A stretch of DNA of 64,000 bases from Penicillus capitatus (taxonomy: Eukaryota > Plantae > Chlorophyta), in the NCBI GenBank assembly GCA_965649825.1, contig OZ287700.1, forward strand, positions 868,001 through 932,000. The letters are read 5' to 3'. The notes beneath the pieces were generated by a model that saw only the letters and a list, made by a program, of their open reading frames with translations, was not told the DNA's origin and searched no databases. Shown piece after piece: positions 4,997 to 62,033 of the stretch. Position 1 is the first letter of the stretch. Each line of letters opens with the position of its first letter. The translations under genes and the position numbers were made by a program.

Positions 4997-7900
4997 TTAT
5001 GCTAGACGAGATTGCAGAGAAGTCGCGAATTCTGCCATTTGAACTCGTAATTTCTTCGACGACCAAACAGACGGCCAATCGGGAACTGAGAACTTCCAGT
5101 CTGTAGGCAGGATGTGTCGGCATGCTGAGCATTTCAGGAGATGATCTCTTGTCTCTGGCACGCGGCCGCAAAAGCGGCAAAGAATTGAGTCTCCATCGGC
5201 GGTATTAAGCAGATTAAACCTGTTGAGATAAACACGGGTTGCCATGTGGCCTGATAGGAATCTGCAGAGGGCTGTGAACTGTCTTCTGCTGTGTGCTTTC
5301 CACCATTTCAACCGAGTCATCTTAACCTTGTCAAAGCACGTGGCTTTCAGAGAGCTTGCACGATCCGTCGATTCCCAAGCGATCTTCCCCTTCGAGTCTG
5401 CAAATAATGAGGCTTCAAAACGCAGTAACTTGAAGCCAGCTTGATCGTCGCCATTCATGGATTCTAGAGTGATCTTTTCCCATCTATCCAGTTTTTCTTG
5501 CGACAGGAACTCTTCGTAACGGTTACTGATGAGAAACAGCGGCGAGTCATAAGTTCCAGCCAATGCAGGATGAAGATCGTAGAAGGACAAATCTTCCAGT
5601 TTGACCTTAGCAAGAAGAGAGCGTCGAGTGATTTCATCATCGGGGAGCCTTAGGCCCGCTAGGGCTAATACTGCTGCTGTTGATGTGGTGCGAAGAGCCC
5701 CAGTGATGAGGAGGGCACCAGACCGAATGACCGACATCAAGGACTTCCTCTTCTGCGTTAGGGCTCTACTACCGGATGACCAGATCAGGGCTCCGTAGTA
5801 GAGGACTGGTGCAACGCATGCCTGGAACAGTGTACGCAGGACGCCAGGAGTGGCACCCCATAAACTGTTGCTGATCCGTTTGATGGACTCCAGTCGACGC
5901 TGTGCTTTCATGCAGACTCCCGAGACGTGAGCGCTGAAGTTTAGCTTGCTGTCCATTTTCAGCCCGAGGTAAGTGAATTGTGGTTCTTCTTGCAATAGGG
6001 AGCCGTCCAGATTCACTTGGATCGATGTGGCCTTTCGGAGTCTTGAGAAGCGTACCAGATGGCTTTTGCTGGCATTAAACTGCATTCCGTTGAGTGTTGC
6101 CCACTGGACGGCCTTCTTCAAGGAGGACTCGAGATGTGCTTGGCCTTCGCCCCGTGGGCCAATCTGGCAGTATAGCAGACAGTCATCAGCGAATAGACAG
6201 CATTTCACCTCAGGGGGAACTGAGTTTGCGAGGCTGTTGACAAAGCACAGAAAGAGCGTAGGCGACAGACATGACCCCTGAGGCACACCAGCCACCGGAC
6301 GGCAGTGGATCGAGGACGTCGGGAGGGAGATGGTAGCTTCCCTTTCCACTAGGAAACTGTCTACCATGCTCCACAGGTAGGCTGGAATGTTGAGCTGCCC
6401 CAATCTGTACATTAGGATCGGATGGGGGACGGTATCAAAGGCTGCAGTGAGATCTAGGCTCACGGCGCCGATCTGACTGCGAGAGTTGAAAGCATGAATG
6501 ATGTCTTCCGCAAACCAGGTTAACGCCGATTCTGTACTGCGAGCTCTTCTGAAACCGAACTGTTGATCGACCAGGCATCCATGCTCTTCGAGAAAGCTGT
6601 ACAGGCGACGCTGTAGAACTCTTTCTAGGACCTTTCCTAGAGTGTTCAAAAGGCAGATTGGCCTCCAGCTGGACACGAGGGAGAGATCTTTGTCAGGTTT
6701 GGGCAGTGGGATGACGGAAGCTTTCTTCCAGGCCTTCGGGAAGTATGCCAAGGAAAGCGCTGCGTTCAGAATTGGAAGGAGGACTTGGCCGGTCACACCT
6801 AGGGTGTTGCGAAGACACAAAGATGGTATCGAGTCCGGGCCAGGCGCTCCATCCTTTGACCGGGTGATTGCTTCTACGAGCTCCTTCCATGTGATCTCTT
6901 CTCCCGGGGAGAAGTCTAGGCGTCTTCTGGCTATTCTGAAGTCTTCCGCGAACTTCCCCAAAACAGACTTTCCTTCATTTGGAAAGAAACGGGCTTCCAA
7001 TGATTTGTAATCCTCTGGTGGCTGGGCGGGTTGGCTACGTTTCCGAGATCTGTCGATTTTTGCAAAGCCATTCCACATGTCCGATTTCATGTCACTGCAG
7101 AATTTGACAAAGGATTTTTTCTTCTGTAGCCGAACTTCTTTCTTGAATGAGGCTCTGGCTTCGCGTGCTTCCTTCCAGCGTGTGGCCAATTCGACTTCGA
7201 GTTGGGCAGACATAGGGTGACTCTTGGCCTTTTGGACCGCTCGTATGTACCTATTCCGAGCACGCTTCATATCCTTCCATTTAAACTTGACAGACTGTGT
7301 GAACCAAGGCTTCGAATCGTTCTGGATTGACTTTGTCCTTGTAAATTGAGAGGCCGTATTCTGTAGAGCACTTGTCAGCATATCGATGCGTTCATCGATT
7401 TGATCTTGGGTCTCCATGGGCAATGAGAACTCAGGCCGGCTGAGTGTCTTTTCGAGGTGCTCATTGAAGGCAGGCCAGTCCACGTCCCTCCAGTTAGTGA
7501 ATCTTCGGGGAGTGATCTTTTGGTACCCGAGGTTGAGCGTTGTTTTAACGAGCGAATGATCGGAAACTGGAATGGCTGAGTGCACTACTCTCCATTCTAC
7601 TATCGACTTTGATAGCGGCGCTGTGGCCAAAGTAATATCAAGCCAATGTGGTCTGTGATCTTGATCGAAGAAAGTAGGAGGGCCTGAGGGGTCGTTAGCG
7701 ATGACCAGCTGGTTTGCACTTATAAAGTCTTCCCATAAACGGCCAATCTCGTTCGGGTGCTCCGGACCCCACAGATAGGAGTGACCATTTCCGTCTCCTA
7801 ACAGTAATATGCGGTCGGTTTTTCTCTTCAATAGGTTGAATGCTTCGTCGACCGCTTCAAGACCGTTTCCGGAGGTGTGTCGCACGTAGAATGAGATCAC

Positions 7901-8290
7901 CCCGATCAATCCGGCAGGGGTATAGACAGTGATTGCTATGACCCTCGGGGAAGGACTGGACAGGGACACCACAGAGTAGTTGATATCTTCCCTGATGAAT
8001 AGTCCACACAGCGATTCACCTTGTGGAGATGATCTCAGCCAGATGTGACGATTTGAGCGAAATTCATTGTTCCTTAGGTACCACGGAGCTTCGCTGACTG
8101 CCACCAGACAAGGCGCCGAGTCGTTCATCCAGAGTTCCAAAGCGGGTAGACTCAAGCTGCGGGAGGCAAGATTTATTTGCTCAAACGTAAGAAAACTTGT
8201 TGACTGATCTATGTGACGGGGGGGGGGTAGGATTGAGCTGTATCGTCGAAACTGAATCGCTTCTTGAGAAAAAACTTGAGGATGGATCAC
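4997..8290 (-). CDS. LINE ORF2: APE endonuclease + reverse transcriptase + C-terminal CCHC finger (1097 aa)
   Basis: APE motifs QINL, SEAPW, GDGNGH, LDITLA, SDH; RT motifs APGPDSI, WRPICLL, QFGFR, LDLTAAFDTV, GVPQGSCLSP, LFADD, YLG; terminal CRFCG..ETRDHLLKC. Confidence 0.95.
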   Translation of the reverse strand: MIHPQVFSQEAIQFRRYSSILPPPRHIDQSTSFLTFEQINLASRSLSLPALELWMNDSAPCLVAVSEAPWYLRNNEFRSNRHIWLRSSPQGESLCGLFIREDINYSVVSLSSPSPRVIAITVYTPAGLIGVISFYVRHTSGNGLEAVDEAFNLLKRKTDRILLLGDGNGHSYLWGPEHPNEIGRLWEDFISANQLVIANDPSGPPTFFDQDHRPHWLDITLATAPLSKSIVEWRVVHSAIPVSDHSLVKTTLNLGYQKITPRRFTNWRDVDWPAFNEHLEKTLSRPEFSLPMETQDQIDERIDMLTSALQNTASQFTRTKSIQNDSKPWFTQSVKFKWKDMKRARNRYIRAVQKAKSHPMSAQLEVELATRWKEAREARASFKKEVRLQKKKSFVKFCSDMKSDMWNGFAKIDRSRKRSQPAQPPEDYKSLEARFFPNEGKSVLGKFAEDFRIARRRLDFSPGEEITWKELVEAITRSKDGAPGPDSIPSLCLRNTLGVTGQVLLPILNAALSLAYFPKAWKKASVIPLPKPDKDLSLVSSWRPICLLNTLGKVLERVLQRRLYSFLEEHGCLVDQQFGFRRARSTESALTWFAEDIIHAFNSRSQIGAVSLDLTAAFDTVPHPILMYRLGQLNIPAYLWSMVDSFLVEREATISLPTSSIHCRPVAGVPQGSCLSPTLFLCFVNSLANSVPPEVKCCLFADDCLLYCQIGPRGEGQAHLESSLKKAVQWATLNGMQFNASKSHLVRFSRLRKATSIQVNLDGSLLQEEPQFTYLGLKMDSKLNFSAHVSGVCMKAQRRLESIKRISNSLWGATPGVLRTLFQACVAPVLYYGALIWSSGSRALTQKRKSLMSVIRSGALLITGALRTTSTAAVLALAGLRLPDDEITRRSLLAKVKLEDLSFYDLHPALAGTYDSPLFLISNRYEEFLSQEKLDRWEKITLESMNGDDQAGFKLLRFEASLFADSKGKIAWESTDRASSLKATCFDKVKMTRLKWWKAHSRRQFTALCRFLSGHMATRVYLNRFNLLNTADGDSILCRFCGRVPETRDHLLKCSACRHILPTDWKFSVPDWPSVWSSKKLRVQMAEFATSLQSRLA

Positions 8291-8307
8291 TGGAAGAAAA
8301 CGAGTAT

Positions 8308-9837
8308 TTACTGTTCTTCATGTTGCATTAACGGTGACGTTTGCTGGACAGGGTGGGGAGCTGCATCTACTGCCATGGCAGCGTCTTCCTCTTCGACGTC
8401 TGAACCCCAGCTGCTTACTCGGTTTTGCTCAAGAGGAGCTGATTGTGCCGACGGCTGCTCCGAAGCCTTGCGGGATGGGCATTCGGAGGACAAGTGTGAC
8501 TGTTTGCAATAAGAGCAGAGGGGAGGGTTGGGACAGTCTACTGCTTTGTGATGCCCCACGCACCCGCATTTCATGCATCGATAGGAAACTGGCTCGAATC
8601 TGCGACAGTAACGCGCGCTCAAATTGACGAAGCAGCCCCCTTGGTTGATCAGGATCTCCAGTAGATCGTGTTCCGCAAAAAGGCGGATTCCACGTCCTTC
8701 GCCCCATGATCCGTCTGGAAGACGACGTTTGAGGCGTGTGGCGCCTTTTATCATCTTTTGGATTTCTTCTGGTCGCAGTCCAATCACGGAATAGTTTTTC
8801 CATACGAGGTCTTCGATAAGTTCGTCTGTAGAGACCTCCGGAACGTTTTCGATGACGACAGATGGGCCAGATGGTCCACTGGGAGGTGGTAATCTCTTCC
8901 AAGTACCGAGGGTTTCTAGTGCCACTGCGTTTTGGTTCAGGTCGCTGAGCTTCGACCACGCTGGCTCTGAGATTTGGATGAGAAATCCGCCTCTGTCGAG
9001 GCGATTCGAGCAGCGCTCTATACAACGACTGCTGCCACAGATCCTGTGCAGGGCTTGTTCGAGCTCGGTCTTGAATTTCAGTCTATCAACGGGCACCTGG
9101 TTGTAGGAGCGAAACTCCGGTTCCCAAATGCGCGTCCTTTCAGGATCTCGACCACCGGCTCCTATCTTAGCGAGATTGGCAAGGGCAGATTTCTTGTCAG
9201 AGCGCTGTCGATCTCTGAGGTTCGCGACGGAAGCTTTCGGGATCTGACTCCAGTTTTGCCCTTCCCGTCGGGCCACAGCTGCATAGGACAGCGCAGCCTT
9301 TGGAGGTGCGCGGCGAGTCTCTAACGTGCTGGTAGGTTCTTTGGGCAGAGTCTTCGCTCCAAGAAGAAAGCCCGCTCGAATACCATCAACATAGGCACCG
9401 GCGACTTGGGCAAAGAAATCGCGGTCCAACTGCTGGTCAGCCATTCTCATTTTGTCAAGGATAGCGGCAAGCTTCTCGCAGGTCTCTATGACTGGATTGG
9501 TGACAGAGGATGCGACTGATGGAACATTCGTAGCTTCCGTTACGGGCGGAGGCTGAGAGGCCGAGGAGGCCTGCTGAGCTTCGGCAGGGTGGCGAAGCTG
9601 AACCTCGGATTCGTCGATAAGAGACGATAGCATGCTGCGTAGTTCGGAGACAGGTGCCTGGCTGCGAAATGAGCAACCTCGCTGTTTGAGCAACCGTTTG
9701 AGTTCTTTTGCCGGAGCACGCGCTATGCCCTCCCTAGAGAGGAGGGGACGCATATCAGAACGTAGATCTGAAGTCTTCCGAACCTTCCCCGACCCTGGGT
9801 CAAGCTTGTCCGACGCCACGCGAGGAGAACGAATCAT
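8308..9837 (-). CDS. LINE ORF1, gag-like nucleic-acid-binding protein with two zinc knuckles (509 aa)
   Basis: CMKCGCVGHHKAVDC (CX2CX4HX5C) and CSYCKQSHLSSEC (CX2CX3HX4C); ends 17 nt before ORF2. Confidence 0.9.
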   Translation of the reverse strand: MIRSPRVASDKLDPGSGKVRKTSDLRSDMRPLLSREGIARAPAKELKRLLKQRGCSFRSQAPVSELRSMLSSLIDESEVQLRHPAEAQQASSASQPPPVTEATNVPSVASSVTNPVIETCEKLAAILDKMRMADQQLDRDFFAQVAGAYVDGIRAGFLLGAKTLPKEPTSTLETRRAPPKAALSYAAVARREGQNWSQIPKASVANLRDRQRSDKKSALANLAKIGAGGRDPERTRIWEPEFRSYNQVPVDRLKFKTELEQALHRICGSSRCIERCSNRLDRGGFLIQISEPAWSKLSDLNQNAVALETLGTWKRLPPPSGPSGPSVVIENVPEVSTDELIEDLVWKNYSVIGLRPEEIQKMIKGATRLKRRLPDGSWGEGRGIRLFAEHDLLEILINQGGCFVNLSARYCRRFEPVSYRCMKCGCVGHHKAVDCPNPPLCSYCKQSHLSSECPSRKASEQPSAQSAPLEQNRVSSWGSDVEEEDAAMAVDAAPHPVQQTSPLMQHEEQ

Positions 9838-32271: not shown

Positions 32272-32509
32272 ACGTTTTGCCGCGGGGGATTCTTATTCAA
32301 CAGATGATTAGTGAGAGATATCCATCGACGATTCCAGGAGTGCTGTGTCGTACAACGTCACATCACTCAGGAATGTAAAGAGAGAAGCGACGCTTTCGAG
32401 CGTCCGTCCTTATAGAAACACCCGTCCCATCCGTCACATCACGCCTTTCCAGGGATCCGCACCCTCTTCGGTATTGTTTCGTCCATCCATCAATTCAACA
32501 CGACGAGGC

Positions 32510-33286
32510 ATGAGCGAGACATCCGACCCGGCGAGTCTCATCGTATCGGATACGTTCTTGATACTCTTCCTATCGTTTTTGACATACCTTCTGGTCATTC
32601 TTGGTGGCATCTATATCGTCTGGCTCTTTCCCGTTGTGCGAAATGGCTCCACCAGTCCCAGTGCCGATGTGCACATTCGATGGGCAACCACCGCCGCGTC
32701 CTTTCTCCATTCCGCCCTCATTGCCTCCGTCGGCATTCTGGTTCTGTTCTTCGAAGACTGGCAACAGAAGTCAATGGTCGATGGCAAGTCGCCTCTGGTC
32801 CCCATCTTTGTGACGTGGGAATTGGGTCATCTCTTGCAGCAGACGATGTTCAAGTGTTATCTCCTCATGGACGTCACCAGTCACCGATCGCACGGTTTGC
32901 TCTCTCTTCTGCGCCATTTGGTGATGATCTCTTTCTTGCCTTGGTACGAACCGCTCGGTATTGGTCATTTTTTTCTCGGTCTCTATTTTATCTCGCACTT
33001 CAGTTCTGCCTTCTGGAATCTGCGTAGTCTATTGGCTAAGGGCGGTAAGGAGCAATCGGGTATCTATCAGTTTGTCTCGATCATGTGTCCCTTCTCTTTT
33101 GTGCTCTGCCGTTTTGTCCCTCTCTTTACCATTCCTCTGACGGACCCTGCTGGTTTTAGAGGTCTTCTTGATCAGTTTTCTGTTCTGCATTTGGCATTGG
33201 TTGTTGCTGTCACCATCTACAACTCGATAGGTTTCATTCAGATCATACAAACGAAATCGATTCTCAAGCGATTCAAACTTGCTTAG
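32510..33286 (+). CDS. TLC (TRAM/LAG1/CLN8) domain membrane protein, intronless
   Basis: Multiple TM segments; SFLHSAL, SHFSSAFWNLRSLL..G...SGIY, FSFVLCRF resemble the TLC consensus. Confidence 0.65.
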   Translation: MSETSDPASLIVSDTFLILFLSFLTYLLVILGGIYIVWLFPVVRNGSTSPSADVHIRWATTAASFLHSALIASVGILVLFFEDWQQKSMVDGKSPLVPIFVTWELGHLLQQTMFKCYLLMDVTSHRSHGLLSLLRHLVMISFLPWYEPLGIGHFFLGLYFISHFSSAFWNLRSLLAKGGKEQSGIYQFVSIMCPFSFVLCRFVPLFTIPLTDPAGFRGLLDQFSVLHLALVVAVTIYNSIGFIQIIQTKSILKRFKLA

Positions 33287-33340: not shown

Positions 33341-35442
33341 TTACAAAACGGGTGACGACTTGTTAAATGAGTGCGATAAAGAGTGATGTAACGTCCATCG
33401 TTCGACTGAGCGTTTCTGCTCCCTGCCTTTCTCAAGACTCGAATAAAAGACAAATGGCAGTCCGGCGATCATGAAGACCTCAAGCGCAAAGAGACTGAAG
33501 CGGAGGGAATCGGTGACATCTAGCAGTCCTCCGACAACAAGGGGACCCATCCACGTCGTGCAGTTTTCCAGCAATCCTTCGAAGGACATGATGGTCGCAC
33601 TGAATCCCTGCGGAATCATATCTGCCATCATCGCACGGACCATAGCTGGAAAGGGCGCAACGAAGAAGGCTGACAGACACATCAGAATATAAATCTCATA
33701 ACGGTTGCGCACGCCGATCCAGATGTAGAGAGGAAGACACATGACGAGGACGCAATAGACCTACGCCGTTCGTTGTACACCAAAGGGGTAGTAGTAGATA
33801 CACGTGTATATGGACCTGGAAGATTCGGAGGATGTTGCCGGAGTATTTCTGGATCAACAGAGAAGTGCCGACGGCGGATGGCACACCGACGGCCAGATAC
33901 AACAAAATGATGGGTGCCAGCTCCGTCGCCGTCATGGCAAATTCGCGTTCGAAGAAGAGGGTGGACATTGCCAGGACGGTCTGGATGGCAAGCCAGAAAA
34001 GCATGCGACCAATCATCAAGGCCAGCAAACGCGGAAGCTTCTGATAAAGCAATTTCAATGTCTTGATCGACCTCTTTGCACCAATCATAAATTTATTGCC
34101 TGTACACGCACAAAGGCATCGCTGTAGTCATAAAGACATGTGTGTATCGGTTTCGATCGTGCCTGGTGGAAAGGGTGGGCCGTCTCTGTTCTTGAGCCGC
34201 GTGATGCCCAGGTAACAGAAGATGGCACCCCATAACGTCGAGACGAGAACAGCGCTGCGTTCGCCGAGGGTGTCTTTGGGATCGTCCTCGTCCGATAGCC
34301 ACAGCAGCAGGCCGAACTGAATCATGAGACAGACAAACTGCCCGGCGATGAAGAAAGCGGATTCGCCGATGGCCGTCCTTCCGGCCACGGCTTCGTAGAG
34401 CCGCTGATACTCGTCCATCAGCTGCACGGTATCGTGCATGTCCGAAGGGTAGTAGTCTGCTCCGGACAGCAATAGATTGCCGGCCGGGTGACTGGCATCG
34501 GAGTCCACTGAGTGCATCGTGGGCGAGGCCACTTCGACGTACATCGGCACGGCGTCTGGTTTCGTAGGGTCTTTGGTGGCAAAGTCGTCGCTGGCGACAC
34601 TGGTCGAAGGTAGCAACAGATCTGGAGAGCTGACCAGGCCTCCTTCGGCCACAGGCGTTCGATCCATCATGTGACGATGGGCCATCTCAATAGAAATGCT
34701 CCCTGGCGAAGGGATCTCGTGCTTCTCCTCGGAATGCAGTTTGTGTTCGAGTTCGACCACTTCACGAGTGGCATTGATAATGAGTGGCAGGTAAGAAGCC
34801 AACGGCGACTTCAGTCCAAAAACAAAAGCCACAGTGCCTGCCACGGTCAGCGCCAGTCCAATGCCATAGAGGTCAGGATTGCTGACGAAGAACATCGCAG
34901 AGAAGACAGGAATCCAAACGAAAACGCAGCCAACGAGAAGCTGCCTACGGTAATGGCCATAGTCACTGAAGGGGCCCACAATGACAAACAACACGCCTAC
35001 AAAGCAGCTCGATGACCTGTCACATCATCACGAGATGGCGCCAGATGTGACCTGTGAGAAAGAGTACGGCAGTGGTGCCGTAGACGATGGCGTTGGTGTA
35101 CTGCACACCGAGTCCAGGTACAGATTTATCGCTGGGGAACCAGACGCAGTCATCTGAATAGCCTTCCGGTCGGGTGTAGGGATCGGGGGCATCTTTGGGA
35201 AACGGTCTGCCTGTTCCGTTGCACAAATCGCCGTCGGCAAACTTCTCACGCCACTCTATCCAGTTCTCTCCCTCGCTGCCCTCAGCCGCCAAGTACTTCG
35301 TTTGCTTGACAATGAGAAGCTGAATAAAGATAATAAGAACGCTCGCCATTGGACCGTGTGCCATCGACGTGAGATAGAGTCCACCGATTTCGCGTTTCTC
35401 GGCGATGGGCGGCGCGTTCGACGTATCGCCGGCGTCAACCAT
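33341..35442 (-). CDS. MFS transporter, Atg22/UMF1-like
   Basis: REIGGLYL, VGPFSDYG.YRRQLL, RAMMADMIPQGFSATIMSF, WMGPLVVG motifs; many TM segments; multi-exon. Confidence 0.8.
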
Positions 35443-48832: not shown

Positions 48833-49870
48833 TCAGTTCCGACGTCTTCTTTCGTTTCTTTCCTCCTTGCTCTTCTTATCCAACTGAAAAGCACCTCGGT
48901 GATTACCGTTGCCGAAAGATGAAAGGTGCTTACCAAGATGTACAGAATACGGAGGAAGATGTTAATGAAATCAAGCAGCAGCTCTGCGGCGCCATCGATC
49001 GGATCGACGTCTCCGGCAGACGCCCGTTCGACCATCATCTGCGAAGACAGAGCATGTTTTCTCACGAAAACGTCACATCACGTTGAGCAGTCATTGCCTG
49101 AGTGTCCACCAGGATGTAAACTGAGAAGAGGATGAGGCCAAAGTATGTCTCAGGCAAATGCGACCACGTGGAGCGACCGAAGATGGCAGAGCCAAAACTC
49201 CAAAAGGTCAAGGCCATCAATCCAGTAGAACAGAATCCTAGAATCAGCAAGGCATTCCACAGCTGTCTTCTTCAGATGGTCAGCCGTACCTGTGAGATAG
49301 AGCATGGAGCGTCGCTTGGCTACCAATGCCGCGGCAGAGAACGAAGCGAAAATGGTCAGTGTAGTGAAGAAGGCCATCAGGACGACAGATGGATAGGTGT
49401 CTATGACAAGGTTAATTGCCGGTCCAATAGACAGACCTTCCAAGAAAGAGAAAGCAGCAAACAAGCCCATCCTTTTTTTCTGTCGGACAGAAAGAGTGAG
49501 AAAGGAGTGAGGATAGAGGCACGAGACAAGGTTCTGCGGTATGGGCTGCACGGTCTTCATGCTGATGAGGCATCCTAAGCCGAGCAAAGCGGTCAGCATA
49601 CCCCCAATGTTCACCAATCCGTCCACGTAAACGCCCAAGGCGCAGACCATCATCGAAATCGCCAGAATGGCGTAGACCTGAGAAACGCATCGTCGGCTGA
49701 CTCTTTTGTCGACGGAACACACCTTTTGAACATGCTTCTGTACACGACGGTCCCTGAACGAACAAACAGTGAGCAACGCGTTAAAGGAATGTGTCGTCTT
49801 ACAGGTCTGTGAACTTCAACAAGGCATCCAAGGTCATGCCTCTCGTAGAAAGGTCGTTGAAGAACTGCAT
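48833..49870 (-). CDS. BI-1: Bax inhibitor-1, canonical copy B
   Basis: 7 exons; VQKHVQKVY, EGLSIGP, YILVDTQ|MMVERA, LLLDFINIFLRIL, basic C-terminal tail. Confidence 0.93.
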
Positions 49871-49969
49871 CGTGGACAAGAACAATGAAAATGACTCGGT
49901 GGAGAATCGATCGAAGAAAGACACGTTGTCCTGGATGTTACGGATGAGAATGATGATGGTTATTGACGT

Positions 49970-50042
49970 GCTCGTGTAGCTCAGAGGATAGAGCGGTCGT
50001 TTCCTAAGCGACAGGTCGCAGGTTCGAACCCTGTCTCGGGCG
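49970..50042 (+). tRNA. tRNA-Arg (anticodon CCT)
   Basis: GCTCGTG acceptor pairing with CTCGGGC (one U:U mismatch), D-arm TAGCTCAGAGGATAGAGC, anticodon stem GTCGT/GCGAC around TTCCTAA, T-loop GGTTCGAACC. Confidence 0.95.
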
Positions 50043-50121
50043 TCATGTCATACATAGCGATGCTGACGAAGCTGCCGTGCATTTTAAACGAGTCACTGTC
50101 AAAATCTGCGAACATCATTCG

Positions 50122-51283: not shown

Positions 51284-53090
51284 TTACTCTCTCCACCATG
51301 CATTCGGTCTCTCGTTATGTGTCTCGGAAGGATGGGCTTTGGGAGTGGCGCCAAACTCGTTGACGAGGAGGTCTCTGAGTTTGGGCCCCAGAATGTCTTC
51401 TTGCACAGGAATGCCAGTCTCGAACTCTTTTGCCAGTTGGGGATTCTCCCCGATCTTGCCGCCGAGGAAAATCTTGACGCCTTCGACTGCTTTGCCGTTC
51501 AGTTTTGCCGGAGCACCCATCAATCCGATATCACCCACTTGTGCCTGACCGCAAGAATTGGGACATCCAGTGAAATGAATTCGCACGCCTTTGGGGAAAT
51601 CGAGCTCAGATTCGAGCTTCTCAATTAATCTCATGGCGCGATTCTTTGTTTCGTAAAGCGCCAAGCCACAGAACTGGGAGCCTGTACACGAAACCAGATT
51701 CCGTTCTAACGGCCCTGGATCGATCCGGTACTTCTGAAAAAATGGCTCCTGCAGACAAGCGTCCACTTTGTCGCTTGGGATGTTAATGAAAAGAAGGTGC
51801 ATATCACACGTAATGCGTACAAAGCCGTCTCCATACTTCTCAGCAATCTCAGCAGCTTCAAAGAAGTCCATCGCTTGGAGACGACCCACAGGGACATGCG
51901 CTCCGATCCATTTCAAGCCTTCCTGTTTCTGATCATGGATGCCCAGGAGATCGCGTCTCTCCCAGGGATCCGCGTCGTGCACTTCCACAGCTCTCGGCAA
52001 TTCGAAACCCATTTTCTCGCCAAGCATCTCTCTGAATCGCTCCGTTCCCATCTCTTCGACCATCCAGATGATACGAGCCTTCTGTCGATTGCCACGAGGA
52101 CCGTGATCTCTGAAGATTTCCAGCAGGGCTTTGGAAAAGGGAACGATCTGTTCTTGGGTCACACTTGCATCGATGGGAAAAGACATGGTGTTGCGTTTGA
52201 TCGAAAAATACCCACCGATCAATACATTGAATCTCACATCATTGCTCAGAGGGTCTTTGACTGCCTCAAACGCAACGTCATTAATGTGTGTGTGCGGAAA
52301 ATCATCTCGGGTGCTGGAGACGCAGAAATTGATCTTTCGTGGCAGATTGGCCAATTCTGGATTGCCCTGATTGTTGTCCGTAATCATGGCCTGCAGCGCA
52401 TAGCAAATCGGACGTGTATCCACCAGTTCATGCGGATCCAGTCCAGCGATTGGATTCCCTGTCAAGTTACGCACATTGTCCATTCCCGTTTGAAAGGACG
52501 TCATGCCGACACCATTCAACTTATCGATGATGCCGGGCGCTGTCTCCATAGTCACCCCACGCAACTGGATCGCAGCACGAGTCGTGATATCGGCACATCC
52601 CTCCTGTCCAAACGGTTCGATACACTCTCCCAGGCATCTCAATTGCGCAGCCGACAGTTCACCATTCGGCACCTGTCACATCATCATGGGTCTTTACTTG
52701 AAAAGGCGAATGACATCCAACCTTGATGCGCATCATGAAGGTACCGGGAACGCGTTTTCGGCGATGGAAGAGTCCAGCCCATTTCATACGGATGTCGATG
52801 TCATCCAGTGCCAGCTCTTCCCACGTCGTCTTGCCTTCGCGGATGAGCTGGGAGAGCTCATACACTTCGGTCCACATACGCGAGCCGCATTTCTTCACTT
52901 TCACTTTCTCGAATTTATTGGCCTTAGGATTCGTCGCCTTCTCGCGCGCCTCATCCGAAAGATATCTCAATCCCGACACATCGACATCGATCTCATGTGA
53001 CGTCGCAGCACGACGCAAACGCGGCGCCTTCACACGGGAGCGATGTGTTTGCACACCGATGGGCACGGAGGAGAACAGAGCGAAGGCCAT
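51284..53090 (-). CDS. NII1: Ferredoxin-nitrite reductase, plastid-targeted, 2 exons
   Basis: DIRMKWAGLFHR, ADITTRAAIQLRG, NLPRKIN, siroheme/4Fe-4S motifs CTGSQFCG and TGCPNSCG. Confidence 0.97.
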
Positions 53091-53304: not shown

Positions 53305-54990
53305 ATGTTATCGGAAGTGTGGGATGCTGTAAGCAACCGTGATGTCTCGTGCTGCCCGCCTCTCTTCCCTTTAGGGCGTACATGAACACTATGCTCGGGC
53401 ATTCGATCGATTCGAAACTTACATCCCGTTCCGCCCCACGGATCTGTGTCTCTTGATCATTCAGGAAGTGACATCGACCCAAGACAGGCGTTGGTTGGAA
53501 AAGGACATCGGAGCATTGGTCGAATTGAATCGCCGATTGGCCTACATCACGAAACTCATGTGACATGACTATCTATTGTTGTATGCCATGATCTGCAAGG
53601 GAATGGATGTATGTGATGCAGGGTGGCACAGAGATTTGACGAATGGCAAGATTCTTACGTCATGCTCGATCCTGATGTCGATGTCATTCTTCACGAATCG
53701 CATACGGAGAGAGGGTGAAGATGCATCCGTCTTACTGATGAGACGTCACATCCGTGGTGCGCTTAGTGACGAGAAGGAAAGACATAGCATCCGATTTCAG
53801 CAGAACTTACAGAAGGCGCTGGAGCATGGCGGGTTTGAGAAACTGACTGAACGAGATTTCGAAGAAGCGCTGAATGCTCGGTCGGTTTTGGGATTGGATG
53901 TGGCTCTGCCAAGCAAGACAGAAATCCAGACGGTCATGTTTTCAAGAGGCCGTCGTCTCACTACGGCATGACCACTGACTGCTCTCGTGCCTCCTCGGCA
54001 TCTCGGCACGCATCTTAGGTCGAAATCCCTGACTGGAGGATGCTGTGGCTGACGATGAAAGAAGTGGAGTTGAGGACGTATCAGCGCGTGGTGCTACTGC
54101 TCCAGAGAGAAGAACAGGAAACGAAGCACAGTTGTTTGGCACCGTATCTGCCATGGAATGCTGAACCGCCGTATCTGCCATGGAATGCCGAACCGTCCCT
54201 GTGCAAGGCGATCAAACCGGGAAAGATGTATTTTAAGATTTTTAAGGATATCGAAGTCAGCGATGTGGACATGCTGATCCCTGGATCGAAAGTGCAGTTC
54301 ACCAGACTGGATTTCATCCTGCTCGTGGTCCCGTTAATGGTGGGAATCATTTCGGCATGCTGGAAGGCAGCAAATGGAACATTGCATTTTGATACGGCAA
54401 CGCATACCATGACATCTACTTTCCTCGTTATTCTGCCATTGATCTATGCGACACGGGCTTACATTCAGTTCTGCCAGAAACGCAATGCCTATCAGTCCAA
54501 TCTGGTCAAGAAGCTTTCCCTTCAGACCATCGCTAACAATGCAGGCAGGGCGTATCTCTGCATCCCTTAAGGCTGAATGCCGTTTTCAGGTGCACTGACA
54601 GCCATTTTGGATGAAGTGGCCGATCAGGAGACCATGGATGTTTTGCTGGCCTATGCTTTCTTATGGAAAGGGCGACGCATTCCGCATGGGATGACACGTT
54701 CTCAGCTGACTAAAGAGATCGAAGCTTTTCTGAATGGCTTGCTGGAAGCACATGGTGTCGAAACGCAGATTGTTTTCAATGCACGAGGAGCCTGTGAACG
54801 GTTGGAGACGATGGGACTCTTTCAGAGATATATGGACTCGCCTGGAGAACCGTGGATGCAGGTTGTCGATAAAGACACCGCCCTGCAGAAACTATCCAGT
54901 GTTGATCTGACAAAGAGGCTGAGACAAGACAGTTTTGGATTCAAACATGTGACCCCCGAATATGAAGAACTGGACATTCATGTGTCTTAG
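53305..54990 (+). CDS. DUF3754 / TMEM143-like protein
   Basis: KIFKDIEVSDVDMLIPG, two TM segments, TIANNAGALTAILDEVADQETMDVLLAYAFL, IVFNARGACERLETMGL; start uncertain. Confidence 0.78.
54142..54195 (+). repeat. 27-bp in-frame tandem duplication (PYLPWNAEP x2)
   Basis: ccgtatctgccatggaatgc(t/c)gaaccg twice with one mismatch. Confidence 0.95.
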
Positions 54991-58524: not shown

Positions 58525-61500
58525 TCAGTTGGAATCGGAAAGGAGATCTTCCAAGGACTGGCGGCTTTTCTCCGTGCAGCGGTTTCGGTAATTTCGGCAC
58601 ATAACGCTAAACGGATTCCTTCCTTTCTTGTCACTGGCGTTCACTTCTGCTCCTTCGGCGGCCAGAAACTATTAATCACCATCTCACAAAAGAAGGAGTC
58701 ATAGGGGAAGACCCTGCCTCGGCGATCTCTGGATGACCGTGCTTTGATGCCTCGTGCAGTGGAGTCCATCCATTCTTGTCGGCAACATTCACTTGCGCTC
58801 CCTCTCTGATGAGCAGCTGAGAATATCAAGAGCATGAGAAAGGGGGTGGTGTTCGATGGACTGAGACGCACTCTTGCTATTTTGATGTATCCAGAATGTG
58901 CAGCAGCATACAATGGCGTCCGTCCGTTTTCATCCGTGGCGTCCACTTCTGCCCCTTCCTCAACGAGCACCTGTCAACCATGACAATTGAATTTGTGACG
59001 ATGCAAGGGTCTGTTGGAGTCCCACCTCGGCGATCTCCAATCGACCGTTTTCCGCGGCCGAATGCAGAGGCGTTATCCCGGTTTTGTCCGCCGCCGCCAC
59101 TTCCGCTCCGTTTGCAACGAACAGCTAAGAGCACCATTTGATCCATACGGCTACTATAGCTCGACGCACCTCGACGATCTCCAGCTGGCCAGCTGTCACG
59201 GCTGTATGCAGAACTGTCCAACCATTCTCGTCCTCGGCATCGGCTTCCGCTCCTTCTCGGATAAGCAGCTACAGATCATCAGCGATGAGATCAGACGTAG
59301 ATCTACGAGAATCGACGCGCCTTTGCCATTTCAAACTGTCCCTGTCTCGAAGCCACGTGCAGCGGCGTCCATCCGCTTTCGTCTCCTTCACCCGCATCGG
59401 CTCCGTTCGATAGAAGCAGCTGCCAAAACGCAAATCCGTTTTAGAAATCGTGACAGAATGAAGCGCACCGTGGCGAGTTTCAGATAGCCATTCATCACCG
59501 CCGAGTGCAACGGTGTCCATCCACTTTTGTCTGCTGCGTCGACGGCGGCTCCTTCCGCGATGAGCAACTGAGAATCGCACGCCATCGATGCAGCAACGCC
59601 CAAGAGTCGAGAATCTCACATTCGCGATTTCCAACTCTCCGTTGCCCGCTGCCACGTGGAGTGGTGTCCATCCTCCCTCGTCAGCGACATCTGCTCTGGC
59701 GCCTTCCTCGATGAGCAACTAACAACCACGCTCGTTCGCATGCGTTCATCCCGTGAGCGGATCGAGACACACTTGCACCATATCCAAGTGACCTCGTCGC
59801 GTTGCTGTGTGCAGCGTCGTCCATCCACCTTCAGCTACGGCACCAGCCTTTGCCCCTTCTTCGATCAGCAACTGCCGAACGACGCTGCATTTGACAGAGC
59901 GCCGCCTGTAACGAGATCCACCTTTGCGATCTCCACGTTGCCATTCAGCGATGCCGAATGCAAAGGTGTCCATCCGCTCTTGTCTGCAGCACTGACCTTG
60001 GCCCCTTCCGCGATGAGCAGCTGCGATGATCGTGCCTCAGTGCGTGTATTGCTGCAGTGTCCCCACCTTTACGATGTCGATGTGTCCGCCAAACACAGCC
60101 GAGTTTATCGGAGCGGAACCTTCTTCGTCTCTGGCATTCACAGCAGCTCCGTCTTCGATTAGAAGCTGCAAGACGGTTATTGACAACGGAAGCTGAATCG
60201 CCTGGGCTTGCCTGTGCAACACCGTAGTGTCCGTTTTGACAGGCAACATGCAAGAGACTCCTCCCCTCTTCGTCAGTGTTAGTCACATCAGCACCAGAGG
60301 ATATGAGAAACTAGAAGAAACAAAAGCACATGTCACATCTCCGTCATCGGCAAATGGACTGCAGCTGTAGGACAAGCAAGGAGGCCGTGATGTTTTTGTG
60401 CAACGTCGAACTCGGGACCGATTCGCGTTGGAAGACGAACGAACCTTTACTGTCCTCTCAGATCCCCTCCATGTAGCAACATACAGTGGGGTGACCGACG
60501 CCTTGTTCACCGAATCGATCTTCACCTCGTTGTTTACGAGAATCTGTGTACAGCGTATCATCTTTTAGCGATCGGAACGAGAGAGAGAAAGCGGCGAAAA
60601 TCTCATACCTCGGCACAATGGACAGAATCGTACGCAGCTGCTCTGTGTAGCAGACCGGATCCCTTTTCCAGCGGGTATTCGTCTCTACTTTTATTGTAGT
60701 ATCCTTCATCGACATCGACACCTGCCAACAAGAGTGCCTCTGCCAGAATTGGGTCGTTTCTTTCGACGACAGAAACCATCTCCTGCGCCATTTTGTGAGG
60801 GACAGGGAAAGATTTCGAGGCTGCCCACCAGGAACAGCTCGGTGGACGAGAGATCTCCAAGGCCTTCGCTGATCTCTGCAATTGCCGCATCTCTGCGCTT
60901 CTTTCTCTGGGAATCCTGTTCGACGATGTAGCGCGGAAGAATAAAGTACGTGATCGCACTTCAGCCTTTCCTTTGATGACAAGCGATATCCATTTCGAGG
61001 AAAATGCAACGCCTGTGTGAATCCCGGGTGTCTCTATGTCACATACGTAGGATCCGTCTTTCGTCTGTTGACCAGCAGAGAAGACACCGACGACCACATC
61101 GCGTGAAGCATCTCCTTTTGCCATACTGCCACGCAAGTCATCCGCCACAATCAGAGGACCTCCGATGTCTCCTAGAACCGATTGTTCGCTATCTGGTTTT
61201 GTGATTGTATAGAAGGCATCTTGGACAACTCACCCAGGCAATCCTTTGAATTGGCGGGTGCTGCACAAATCGCATGCTCCTCCAGTTCAGTATCGAAGAT
61301 ATCCTGACAGTCCTCCAATGGTGCAGATGTCAAGTGATGCATCATCTCCTCGACGGTGACCGGTTTTCCAGCATCATCGAAGCTCAGTCCAAAGGCGACG
61401 AAGTCGACACCTTCGAGGGAGCCTTTCTTATCGAGTCCTGGAATCGAAGCATCGATGTCTCTGTTTAACTGAAGCATGGCGATATCAAAAATCCCGTCGA

Positions 61501-62033
61501 TTTCGCCTGTCCAGTTTTCGTGTGTAATAGAATCAATTGTGCTATACATCTAGACAGAGAGATGTCGAGCACCGTCTGCCGATGCCGTCACCTCACCAAA
61601 TTTTCATGTGAATCATTTGTGTCGTCGATTCCGCACTGAATGAGGGGATAGTAGCCAATCGCTTCATCATTCTCAGTTTCCAAGCAATGTGCGGCAGTCA
61701 AGACCCACGATCTGTCGATCAATGTACCGCTGCACACATGGGCCTCCGATCCTCGGCTTCGCATACGGCACAGATATGGGAATCTCTGGGAAGAGATACC
61801 GGTTTCTTCCTGTACCGAAGAGAGAGGCGACGCGTAAGGTCGCGTAGCGTTCACGATCTTGTACCAACCTTTTCTCCGTCGGCCGCTTTGTCCAAACTCT
61901 GAGCATCTCCTTCTGCATTAAACAGACGAACATTTCATTCGGCTTTCGTTCTCGTAATGCTGAGTTTCGGACTTGCGATTGCGAAGATGAGGAGTAGTAT
62001 CCAGGTCATGGCCTGTCGGGCGGCGTTCTTCAT
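58525..62033 (-). CDS. Signal peptide + trypsin-like (S1) pseudoprotease + ~13 ankyrin repeats
   Basis: MKNAARQAMTWILLLIFAIA; CSGTLI..WVLTAAHC; FDIAML; DCLGDIGGPL; in-frame splicing through a linker to twelve 33-aa ankyrin exons and a terminal exon ending LLSDSN*. Confidence 0.88.

What the first reader, a model, noticed from the sequence alone, without database searches (positions are those of the whole stretch)
58525..62033. Secreted trypsin-fold decoy (catalytic Ser to Ile) fused to a long ankyrin array
Seen: signal-peptide-like start and an S1 protease fold with His (TAAHC) and Asp (FDIAML) kept but GDSGGP changed to GDIGGP (ATC codon at 61164-61166). Canonical splice sites join it in frame to about 13 ankyrin repeats; no TM segment is evident. 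Known: ankyrin repeats are normally intracellular, and Ser-less S1 homologues act as recognition or cofactor proteins in invertebrate immunity. Inference: an extracellular or vacuolar sensor/scaffold with a bait domain for proteases, inhibitors or substrates plus a variable binding surface. I do not recognise this architecture as described.
Basis: partly seen in the sequence, partly recalled or inferred. Interest (0 to 1): 0.8.

Follow-up and report, generated by a model that had tools for sequence, protein, structure and literature searches.

The report
Serine-less trypsin-ankyrin protein of a green alga
This is a real, conserved green-alga gene for a secreted-type trypsin-fold protein that has lost its catalytic serine and carries 14 ankyrin repeats; it is one inactive member of an unstudied gene family of siphonous green algae whose other members mostly keep the serine.

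Summary
On the minus strand (ATG 62033, stop 58525) an 18-exon gene encodes 842 aa. It has a signal-peptide-like start, an S1A (trypsin) fold with His and Asp kept and Ser195 replaced by Ile (ATC, 61166-61164), a 72-aa linker, 14 ankyrin repeats and no TM segment.

The fusion needs no splice: the end of the trypsin fold, the linker and the first ankyrin repeat share exon 5. A syntenic orthologue at about 78% nucleotide identity has the same 18 exons and the same GDIGGP. dN/dS is about 0.2 for both domains, so this is neither a pseudogene nor a mis-join.

The architecture is not unique. The same signal peptide, S1, ankyrin and Cys-tail layout occurs in Ostreobium and Caulerpa gene models, in transcript-like contigs, and in at least four paralogous loci of the two genomes compared. 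Most copies keep GDSGGP, including the closest paralogue. Six other domains lost the serine.

I found no paper describing the family. The "decoy/sensor with a variable surface" reading is unsupported, because the repeats are one-to-one between species and their binding face is not hypervariable.

Best reading: a non-catalytic binding or regulatory derivative of a lineage-specific secreted protease family. Moderate interest.

The parts
58525..62033 (-). Whole coding region: 18 exons, 842 aa, with 17 introns of 45-134 nt (14 GT-AG, 3 GC-AG)
   Evidence: The orthologue in L001 has the same 18 exons.
61973..62033 (-). Exon 1: start codon and signal-peptide-like segment MKNAARQAMTWILLLIFAIA
   Evidence: A 2-nt indel against the orthologue about 50 nt upstream of the ATG shows that the upstream sequence is not coding.
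61869..61912 (-). Exon 2: short propeptide-like segment KGDAQSLDKAADGEK
   Evidence: Introns 1 and 2 differ from the orthologue by 2 nt each, which marks them as non-coding.
61597..61809 (-). Exon 3: first part of the S1 fold. His57 codon CAT lies at 61689-61687 (TAAHC). The fold begins EETG where active relatives have IVGG/IGGG.
61234..61549 (-). Exon 4: middle of the S1 fold. Asp102 codon GAT lies at 61486-61484 (FDIAML). The exon ends ...KDCLG.
60987..61171 (-). Exon 5, first part: end of the S1 fold, starting (G)DIGGP. Ile codon ATC at 61166-61164 stands in place of Ser195.
60771..60986 (-). Exon 5, middle: 72-aa linker with no hydrophobic segment. It differs from the orthologue by two in-frame codon indels.
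60609..60770 (-). Exon 5, end: atypical first ankyrin repeat with an inserted loop (…LLLAGVDVDEGYYNKSRDEYPLEKGSGLLHRAAAYDSVHCAE). The same repeat is found in relatives P0176 and P0184.
58718..60543 (-). Exons 6-17: twelve ankyrin repeats, one 99-nt phase-0 exon each. Exons: 60543-60445, 60310-60212, 60165-60067, 60020-59922, 59871-59773, 59718-59620, 59567-59469, 59419-59321, 59268-59170, 59124-59026, 58970-58872, 58816-58718.
58525..58668 (-). Exon 18: last (capping) ankyrin repeat, the family-typical tail NPFSVMCRNYRNRC…LEDLL with two Cys, and the stop codon

Best explanation
The gene encodes a catalytically dead member (a non-peptidase homologue) of a lineage-specific family of secretory-pathway proteins of siphonous (bryopsidalean-type) green algae. 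The family layout is: signal peptide, S1A trypsin fold, linker, ankyrin array, and a short tail with two Cys.

**Shown.**
- The gene is intact, conserved and under purifying selection in two diverged genomes.
- It has lost the Ser195 nucleophile (Ile).
- It has lost the Ile16-type activation N-terminus (EETG instead of IVGG).
- It keeps the S1 disulfide cysteines and all 14 ankyrin repeats.
- Its closest paralogue keeps the active-site Ser (GDSGGP) and is followed by at least 11 ankyrin exons.

**Inferred.**
- The protein enters the ER, loses its signal peptide, and ends up wholly luminal, that is, vacuolar or extracellular.
- It cannot cleave peptide bonds.
- It arose by duplication of an active S1-ankyrin protease, so it most likely still binds the partners that the family's ankyrin array and protease cleft recognise.
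- It would then act as a non-cleaving binder: a competitor, regulator or cofactor of its active paralogues, which is how Ser-less S1 homologues work in animals.
For: **Gene model and fusion.**
- Exon 5 carries the end of the trypsin fold, the linker and the first ankyrin repeat in one open frame.
- The orthologue L001 is collinear with window 63990-57910 at 76-80% nucleotide identity, with a USP7/UCH gene upstream in both. It has the same 18 exons and the same GDIGGP.
- Exon 5 differs from the orthologue by 6 nt, in frame, while 9 of 17 introns differ in length by a non-multiple of 3.

**Constraint.**
- dN/dS is 0.20 for the trypsin fold, 0.20 for the ankyrin array, 0.61 for the linker and 0.94 for the signal-peptide region; dS is 0.44.
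- All 13 Cys and three N-x-S/T sequons are conserved, two of them in ankyrin repeats.

**Fold and residues.**

**Family.**
- An exhaustive HMMER search gave only 53 hits. They include full-length signal-peptide, S1 (GDSGGP) and ankyrin proteins from Ostreobium and Caulerpa, and uninterrupted ORFs on 2.7-3.1 kb Logan contigs.
- Single collinear BLASTP alignments run through S1, linker and ankyrin to P0184 (E 2e-37) and to Caulerpa g8885.t1 (E 2e-42).
- Paralogous loci have a trypsin fold followed by exon-per-repeat ankyrin arrays: L004 (9 exons), L005 (3 or more), L006 (9 or more) and L007 (11 or more).
- In the neighbour-joining tree the window gene and its orthologue sit next to the Ser-bearing L007 paralogue.
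- Tally across relatives: 52 domains keep Ser and 6 do not.
- The full-length relatives whose N-terminus is read mostly start with signal-peptide-like segments.
- The Ostreobium genome paper reports an S1 expansion with about 40% predicted secreted.
Against: - There is no transcript or protein evidence for this gene itself. The search found no spliced product.
- The signal peptide and the absence of a TM segment were judged by simple rules, not by a dedicated predictor.
- Ankyrin repeats outside the cytosol are unusual.
- One Ostreobium gene model (P0194) has a hydrophobic stretch between the S1 fold and the ankyrin repeats. Some relatives may therefore place the array in the cytosol.
- Neutral divergence is uncertain. 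Introns are 83% identical and flanks 76-80%, against dS 0.44, so the true dN/dS may be nearer 0.3-0.5.
- The competitor or cofactor role is by analogy only.
Confidence: 0.65

Rival explanations
1. One reading: an extracellular or vacuolar immune-type sensor or decoy. The dead protease would be bait for foreign proteases or inhibitors, and the ankyrin array would be a fast-changing recognition surface.
For: - It is a Ser-less protease fold joined to a repeat array.
- The family is expanded, and the Ser was lost repeatedly within it.
- One paralogue lies next to a NACHT/HEAT gene.
Against: - dN/dS is 0.20 for both domains.
- Repeat number and order are identical in the two species, and the binding-face positions are not markedly more variable: 25% against 17%.
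- There is no signalling domain in the gene.
- No neighbouring gene in the window suggests a guard.
Confidence: 0.12
2. The topology is not fully luminal. The N-terminal hydrophobic stretch is not a cleaved signal peptide, or the protein is otherwise held so that the ankyrin array faces the cytosol, where such repeats normally work.
For: - Ankyrin repeats are overwhelmingly cytosolic (general knowledge).
- The Ostreobium model P0194 has a TM-like stretch between the S1 fold and the ankyrin repeats, and P0190 is an S1-TM-kinase protein.
Against: - No segment of the window protein or its orthologue reaches TM-like hydrophobicity, and the N-terminal core is only about 12 residues.
- The S1 disulfide cysteines are kept.
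- Active relatives have Pro/Ser/Thr-rich linkers and a conserved Cys pair after the last repeat, as extracellular proteins typically do.
- Sequons in two ankyrin repeats are conserved.
Confidence: 0.1
3. It is a decaying or neutral relic of an active protease gene, with no function of its own.
For: - The catalytic Ser and the activation N-terminus are both lost.
- The protein is less conserved (80% aa identity) than the nearby nitrite reductase (97%).
Against: - The 842/844-codon frame is intact.
- 16 of 17 introns have GT or GC donors and all have AG acceptors in both genomes, at dS 0.44.
- dN/dS is about 0.2 in both domains.
Confidence: 0.04
4. It is two adjacent genes, or an assembly or annotation mis-join, rather than one fusion protein.
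For: - An ATG (HKMAQEM) lies just before the first ankyrin repeat.
- No RNA data exist for this gene.
Against: - There is no in-frame stop between the domains in either species.
- That Met is Val in the orthologue.
- Linker indels are in frame.
- The same junction is seen in Ostreobium and Caulerpa models and in uninterrupted transcript-like ORFs.
Confidence: 0.03

Closest known systems
Uncharacterised S1-ankyrin gene models of Bryopsidales: Ostreobium quekettii CAD7703549.1 / A0A8S1JBT6 and CAD7698941.1 / A0A8S1IV79; Caulerpa lentillifera g8885.t1. They form part of the S1 expansion noted in the Ostreobium genome paper (10.1101/2020.07.21.211367).
   Same: - The whole layout matches: signal peptide, S1A fold with the family-typical insertion after GDxGGPL (…A.AP.G….G.P..D..VGI.S.G), linker, ankyrin repeats, and a tail with two Cys and LE.LL.
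- Genomic copies share the intron just before the GDSGGP codons and the one-exon-per-repeat structure.
   Different: - They keep Ser195 and an I-V/G-G-G N-terminus.
- The annotated models show 3-5 detectable repeats, against 14 here.
- Their linkers are Pro/Ser/Thr-rich, while the window's is basic.
- Identity in the S1 fold is only 25-38%.
Arthropod serine protease homologues (clip-domain SPHs such as PPAF-II, Manduca SPH1/2 and masquerade). This comparison is from my own knowledge.
   Same: They are secreted S1A folds whose catalytic Ser is replaced. They act as binding proteins or cofactors of active paralogues in extracellular cascades.
   Different: - Clip domains sit N-terminal and there are no ankyrin repeats; no clip domain was found here.
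- The Ser is usually replaced by Gly, not by a bulky Ile.
- They are animal proteins.
- They are still cleaved at an activation site, which is absent here.
Vertebrate non-catalytic S1 homologues (haptoglobin, HGF/MSP, azurocidin, protein Z). This comparison is from my own knowledge.
   Same: The S1A fold is re-used as a pure binding module after triad loss, under purifying selection.
   Different: - The partner domains differ (kringle, CCP, Gla/EGF).
- Usually more than one triad residue is changed.
- They are unrelated to this lineage.
Ankyrin-repeat proteins that act outside their producer's cytosol (bacterial type IV secreted Ank effectors; spider latrotoxins). Named only, from my own knowledge.
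   Same: Long ankyrin arrays are exported from the producing cell.
   Different: - They lack a classical ER signal peptide plus S1 fold.
- They act in another cell's cytosol or membrane.
- There is no homology beyond the repeat itself.

Membership tests
Peptidase family S1A (chymotrypsin fold, Pfam PF00089) | Sequence match to the Trypsin profile above the curated cutoff | tested here: met
   72.1 bits against a cutoff of 20.6, over aa 43-273. 340 PDB S1 sequences matched at E<=0.001.
Peptidase family S1A (chymotrypsin fold, Pfam PF00089) | Catalytic His57 (TAAHC) and Asp102 (DIAL-type motif) | tested here: met
   TAAHC with CAT at 61689-61687 and FDIAML with GAT at 61486-61484; both align.
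Peptidase family S1A (chymotrypsin fold, Pfam PF00089) | Catalytic Ser195 in GDSGGP | tested here: not met
   GDIGGP, with ATC at 61166-61164. It is the same in L008 and in the orthologue. The protein is therefore a non-peptidase homologue, not an active member.
Peptidase family S1A (chymotrypsin fold, Pfam PF00089) | Ile16-type new N-terminus (IVGG) created by activation cleavage | tested here: not met
   The window has K|EETG and the orthologue K|DETG, where active relatives have K|IVGG or K|IGGG. The 'IVNATRP' seen in another frame lies in intron 2, which differs by 2 nt in the orthologue.
Peptidase family S1A (chymotrypsin fold, Pfam PF00089) | Conserved disulfide cysteines (42-58, 168-182, 191-220) | tested here: met
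   C61/C77, C187/C201 and C210/C255 sit at the aligned positions, and all are conserved in the orthologue. The pairing itself is inferred.
Ankyrin repeat (Pfam PF00023 / PF12796) | Tandem 33-residue repeats matching the profile | tested here: met
   Ank_2 E 3.1e-162; Ank E 1.4e-103 with 12 stretches. There are 13 exons in register.
Bryopsidalean S1-ankyrin family (provisional; defined here) | Signal peptide, S1 fold, linker and ankyrin repeats in one polypeptide | tested here: met
   Collinear alignments to P0184 and P0174.
Bryopsidalean S1-ankyrin family (provisional; defined here) | Family-typical insertion after GDxGGPL, atypical first repeat with an inserted loop, and a C-terminal tail with two Cys | tested here: met
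Bryopsidalean S1-ankyrin family (provisional; defined here) | Intron immediately before the GD(S)GGP codons, and one 99-nt exon per repeat in genomic copies | tested here: met
   Seen in the window and L001 and in L004-L007. There, ORF fragments read through an intron at the same place, and the ankyrin exons are about 150 nt apart.
Arthropod clip-domain serine protease homologues | N-terminal clip domain(s) | tested here: not met
   No CLIP (PF12032) match. The segment before the S1 fold is only about 22 aa.
NLR-type or guard/decoy immune receptors | A signalling or nucleotide-binding domain (NACHT, NB-ARC, TIR, kinase) in the protein, or a dedicated guard next to it | tested here: not met
   Only Trypsin and Ank families were found. 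Neighbouring ORFs carry no such domain.

The most novel reading that the evidence does not exclude
The S1-ankyrin family, with its active members and its Ser-less members such as this one, could be a truly extracytosolic (vacuolar or extracellular) ankyrin-based proteolytic system peculiar to giant single-celled green algae. One example would be a clotting-like wound-plug cascade in which ankyrin arrays capture partners once compartments mix, and dead paralogues serve as cofactors or brakes. At one paralogous locus the S1-ankyrin gene sits between two VWA + C-type-lectin genes, which fits an extracellular adhesion or clotting theme but proves nothing.
Probability: 0.12. Interest if true: 0.8.

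Novelty: new variant of a known kind. Interest (0 to 1): 0.45.

Why it matters
Ser-less S1 homologues are well known in animals, but I know of none described in green algae. Ankyrin arrays behind a signal peptide with no membrane anchor are rare anywhere.

The finding points to a whole unstudied family in Bryopsidales. These organisms are single giant cells that must seal wounds within seconds, and their S1 protease expansion has so far been read only as extracellular digestion.

If the ankyrin arrays really work in the lumen, vacuole or wall, that widens where this repeat is known to operate. The family also offers natural active/inactive pairs for studying how pseudo-proteases arise.

For annotation, the result shows that these genes are single fusions. 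Prokaryote-style gene callers fragment them.

Tried and rejected
1. I did not work around this. I searched with the permitted fragment P0001 instead and made no structure model.
2. **Profile search.** A search with a family alignment mostly returned generic animal and bacterial trypsins. None of its 120 listed hits carried an Ank Pfam domain, and it added only a few fragments.
3. **Literature.** Searches on trypsin/S1 plus ankyrin in green or siphonous algae found no description of the fusion. One search was malformed. The Ostreobium paper mentions only the S1 expansion.
4. **'KIVNATRP' as an activation site.** I rejected this other-frame reading. It lies in intron 2 (59 nt against 57 nt in the orthologue), and no donor in exon 1 fits that frame.
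5. **Possible short introns inside exon 5.** Candidates of 34 and 44 nt break the frame. They are also contradicted by the S1 alignment and by the in-frame conservation.
6. **An upstream coding exon.** A 2-nt indel against the orthologue just upstream of the ATG argues against it.
7. **Rate comparison with an active paralogue.** The pairs P0143/P0196 and P0145/P0197 are near-identical; P0196 traced to the same assembly as P0143 (P0197 was not traced), so neither was used as a between-species pair.
8. **Other scans.** Tandem Repeats Finder does not see the ankyrin exon array because it is too diverged. Rfam and tRNA scans found nothing near the gene.
9. **Paralogues in the window.** None were found.
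Full report
**1. What is there**

The feature lies on the minus strand. Three-frame translation and inspection of splice sites give a clean 18-exon model from ATG 62033 to TGA 58525. The coding sequence is 2529 nt and encodes 842 aa.
- The 17 introns are 45-134 nt long. Fourteen are GT-AG and three are GC-AG.
- Exon 1 encodes MKNAARQAMTWILLLIFAIA.
- Exons 3-5 encode a trypsin fold. Pfam Trypsin covers aa 43-273 with 72.1 bits against a cutoff of 20.6.
- The last part of exon 5 and exons 6-18 encode ankyrin repeats (Ank_2 E 3e-162).
- A sequence search of the PDB aligns TAAHC, DIAML and GD-GGP with TMPRSS13, kallikrein-6 and factor D. The Ser195 column is the one mismatch in the motif.
- Read directly, the codons are CAT (His) 61689-61687, GAT (Asp) 61486-61484 and ATC (Ile) 61166-61164.

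The trypsin-ankyrin junction needs no splice, because the end of the fold, a 72-aa linker and the first ankyrin repeat all lie in exon 5 (61171-60609).

**2. Whose genome**

A 462-aa ORF at 51284-52672 (minus strand) is a ferredoxin-nitrite reductase. Its best named relatives are Ostreobium quekettii (66%) and Bryopsis sp. (64%), followed by other green algae. Together with the family hits described below, this suggests a bryopsidalean-type (siphonous) green alga. The exact taxon is unresolved, and the margin over Volvocales (64%) is small.

The window is 99.96% identical to an ENA contig (ERZ25074695, 1.17 Mb).

**3. Is it one real gene?**

A second assembly (ERZ26696514, locus L001) is collinear with window 63990-57910 at 76-80% nucleotide identity. 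A USP7/UCH gene lies upstream in both. I treat this copy as the orthologue in a sister lineage. The following points support one real, functional gene.
- The orthologue has the same 18 exons, an intact 844-codon frame and GDIGGP.
- Exon 5 differs by 6 nt, as two in-frame codon indels.
- Nine of 17 introns differ in length by a non-multiple of 3, and two donors switch between GT and GC.
- The Met before the first ankyrin repeat is Val in the orthologue, so it is not a conserved start codon.
- Nei-Gojobori dN/dS is 0.20 for the trypsin fold, 0.20 for the ankyrin array, 0.61 for the linker and 0.94 for the signal-peptide region. dS is 0.44.
- Introns (83% identical) and flanks suggest a somewhat lower neutral rate, so the true ratio may be 0.3-0.5. 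It remains clearly below 1.

A pseudogene and a two-gene artefact are therefore both unlikely. No transcript of this gene was found in the protein collection.

**4. Topology**

- The N-terminus has the build of a cleaved signal peptide in both species.
- No 19-residue window exceeds a Kyte-Doolittle mean of 1.34, so no TM helix is evident.
- The cysteines at the three classical S1 disulfide positions are present. All 13 Cys are conserved between the two species.
- Three N-x-S/T sequons are conserved, two of them in ankyrin repeats.

The inference is that the whole polypeptide is made in the ER lumen. That inference has not been tested.

**5. Catalysis**

Two things are lost: Ser195 (now Ile), and the activation N-terminus. 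Active relatives have K|IVGG or K|IGGG at the exon 2/3 boundary, while the window has K|EETG and the orthologue K|DETG. An 'IVNATRP' visible in another frame lies in intron 2. His57, Asp102 and Gly193 remain. I infer that the protein has no serine-protease activity.

**6. It belongs to a family**

An exhaustive HMMER scan of 1.84 billion representatives, using the orthologue's ORF fragment P0001 as query, gave only 53 hits at E<=0.001.

Full-length relatives with the same layout:
- Signal peptide, S1 with GDSGGP, linker and ankyrin repeats occur in Ostreobium CAD7698941.1 and CAD7703549.1, two further Ostreobium models, and Caulerpa lentillifera g8885.t1.
- The same layout occurs as uninterrupted ORFs on short contigs: 2.7-3.1 kb Logan contigs (P0160, P0170/P0195) and a 1.3 kb JGI contig (P0184). 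These are most simply spliced transcripts.
- BLASTP gives single collinear alignments through S1, linker and ankyrin to P0184 (E 2e-37) and to the Caulerpa protein (E 2e-42).

Shared hallmarks:
- an insertion after GDxGGPL;
- an atypical first repeat with an inserted loop;
- a tail [TN]P[FLY]D.[IV]C…C…LE.LL.

Genomic loci where a trypsin fold is followed on the same strand by exon-per-repeat ankyrin arrays:

| Locus | Genome | Active-site motif | Ankyrin exons |
|---|---|---|---|
| L004 | sister | GDSGGP | 9 |
| L005 | the window's own | GDSGGP | 3 or more |
| L006 (second gene) | sister | GDSGGP | 9 or more |
| L007 | sister | GDSGGP | 11 or more |

L007 is the closest paralogue, at 38% identity. 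It shares the GYYP..CGI and SAG.QT..GS.VCD features and groups with the window gene in a rough neighbour-joining tree.

Across the relatives collected, 52 S1 domains keep Ser and six do not: Leu three times, and Phe, Gly and Ala once each. Ankyrin-bearing members are scattered over the tree. The fusion is therefore old in this lineage, and loss of the Ser has recurred.

**7. The ankyrin array is stable**

- All 13 single-exon repeats are one-to-one between the species, with 22-32 of 33 residues identical. Repeats within the protein share only 5-24 of 33.
- Differences concentrate at exon-register positions 3-5, 14 and 33.
- The six positions usually forming the binding face differ at 18 of 72 sites (25%), against 55 of 324 (17%) elsewhere.

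This is not an arms-race pattern.

**8. How it most likely works**

Shown: a conserved, constrained, secretory-type S1-ankyrin protein that lacks both the nucleophile and the activation N-terminus. It descends from a family whose other members look active.

Inferred: it binds rather than cuts, through a crippled protease cleft and a 14-repeat platform. It probably acts on the same partners as its active paralogues, as a competitor, brake or cofactor. This rests on analogy with animal serine protease homologues (my own knowledge), not on a test.

**9. Known or new**

Non-catalytic S1 homologues are a known kind. The Ostreobium genome paper reports an S1 expansion: 159-189 genes there and 57 in Caulerpa, with about 40% predicted secreted. 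It does not mention ankyrin. Seven literature searches found no description of an S1-ankyrin fusion (for one paper).

The gene is thus a new variant of a known kind, inside a family that is visible in databases but uncharacterised.

**10. Limits**

- There are no RNA or protein data for this gene.
- The taxon is only approximate.
- The tree and the dN/dS values are rough.
- One Ostreobium model (P0194) may carry a TM segment between the two halves.

Noticed in passing
window 60867, 60931, 61026: The only three differences between the window and the public contig of the same species (L008) in 7.4 kb all fall inside exon 5 of this gene. They are synonymous P260, A292D in the linker, and synonymous A313. 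The clustering is unexplained; allelic variation or a patch of polishing differences are possible.
   Followed up: partly
window 57910 / 15889-22115; L001 13759-19092: Synteny with the sister genome breaks just downstream of the gene. L001 continues with sequence matching window 15889-22115 in the opposite orientation, which implies an inversion or rearrangement of about 42 kb between the two genomes.
   Followed up: no
window 4997-9837 (minus strand): A 1097-aa open frame carries endonuclease and reverse-transcriptase domains (Exo_endo_phos_2, RVT_1). It is preceded by a 509-aa ORF with no Pfam match. This looks like an apparently intact non-LTR (LINE-like) retrotransposon.
   Followed up: no
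window 51284-52672 (minus strand): This is a ferredoxin-nitrite reductase in a single long exon. It is 97% identical to the sister genome's copy, with best named relatives Ostreobium (66%) and Bryopsis (64%). It was used here only for placing the taxon.
   Followed up: partly
window introns at 60211, 59320 and 58717 (donors); L001 11595 and 12494: GC-AG introns are frequent in this gene (3 of 17), and donors switch between GT and GC across the two species. One orthologue donor reads GA (intron 14, L001 12494). That is either a non-canonical site, a sequencing error, or use of a GT 6 nt upstream.
   Followed up: partly
L004 2634-11482 and L009 (sister genome): An active S1-ankyrin paralogue sits between two genes encoding VWA + C-type lectin proteins; in L004 another trypsin-like gene also lies nearby. 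The arrangement is present twice at about 97% identity on two contigs of one assembly, either as haplotypes or as a recent duplication.
   Followed up: partly
L007 11844-14552 (minus strand): A large NACHT + HEAT-repeat gene lies next to the closest Ser-bearing paralogue. L007 7-558 holds a further trypsin-like ORF with GDAGSP, where Ser is replaced by Ala.
   Followed up: no
L006 6001-6537 versus P0199: P0150 (GDLGSP, TTG) and P0199 (GDSGSP) share a 90%-identity cluster, so this Ser-to-Leu loss looks very recent. No ankyrin exons were detected directly after P0150.
   Followed up: partly
P0190 (Ostreobium CAD7699372.1) and P0194: Some relatives are membrane proteins. P0190 has S1 domains, a TM helix and two kinase-like regions (1572 aa). 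P0194 has a TM-like stretch between the S1 fold and the ankyrin repeats, though this may be a gene-model artefact.
   Followed up: no
Family-wide (window 61166-61164; L002-L007): The Ser195 codon is TCN in the genomic paralogues but AGY in the two transcript-like contigs. The window's ATC is one step from AGC but at least two steps from TCN. The Leu (TTG) variant is one step from TCG.
   Followed up: partly
window 49969-50044 (plus strand); 54040-54570; 32345-33286; 34128-34994; 49150-49776: Other genes noticed in the window are a tRNA-Arg(CCU) and ORFs with DUF3754, TLC, Atg22-like and Bax-inhibitor-1 domains. None has an evident link to the finding.
   Followed up: no
window 59500-60000 (exons 9, 10, 11, 12, 13, 14 and 17): Seven of the 14 repeats have Trp just before TPLH/TTLH/TVLH (GWTPLH), conserved in the orthologue. 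This would form an aromatic ridge on the concave face. GW-TPLH is common in ankyrin proteins generally, so it may mean nothing.
   Followed up: no
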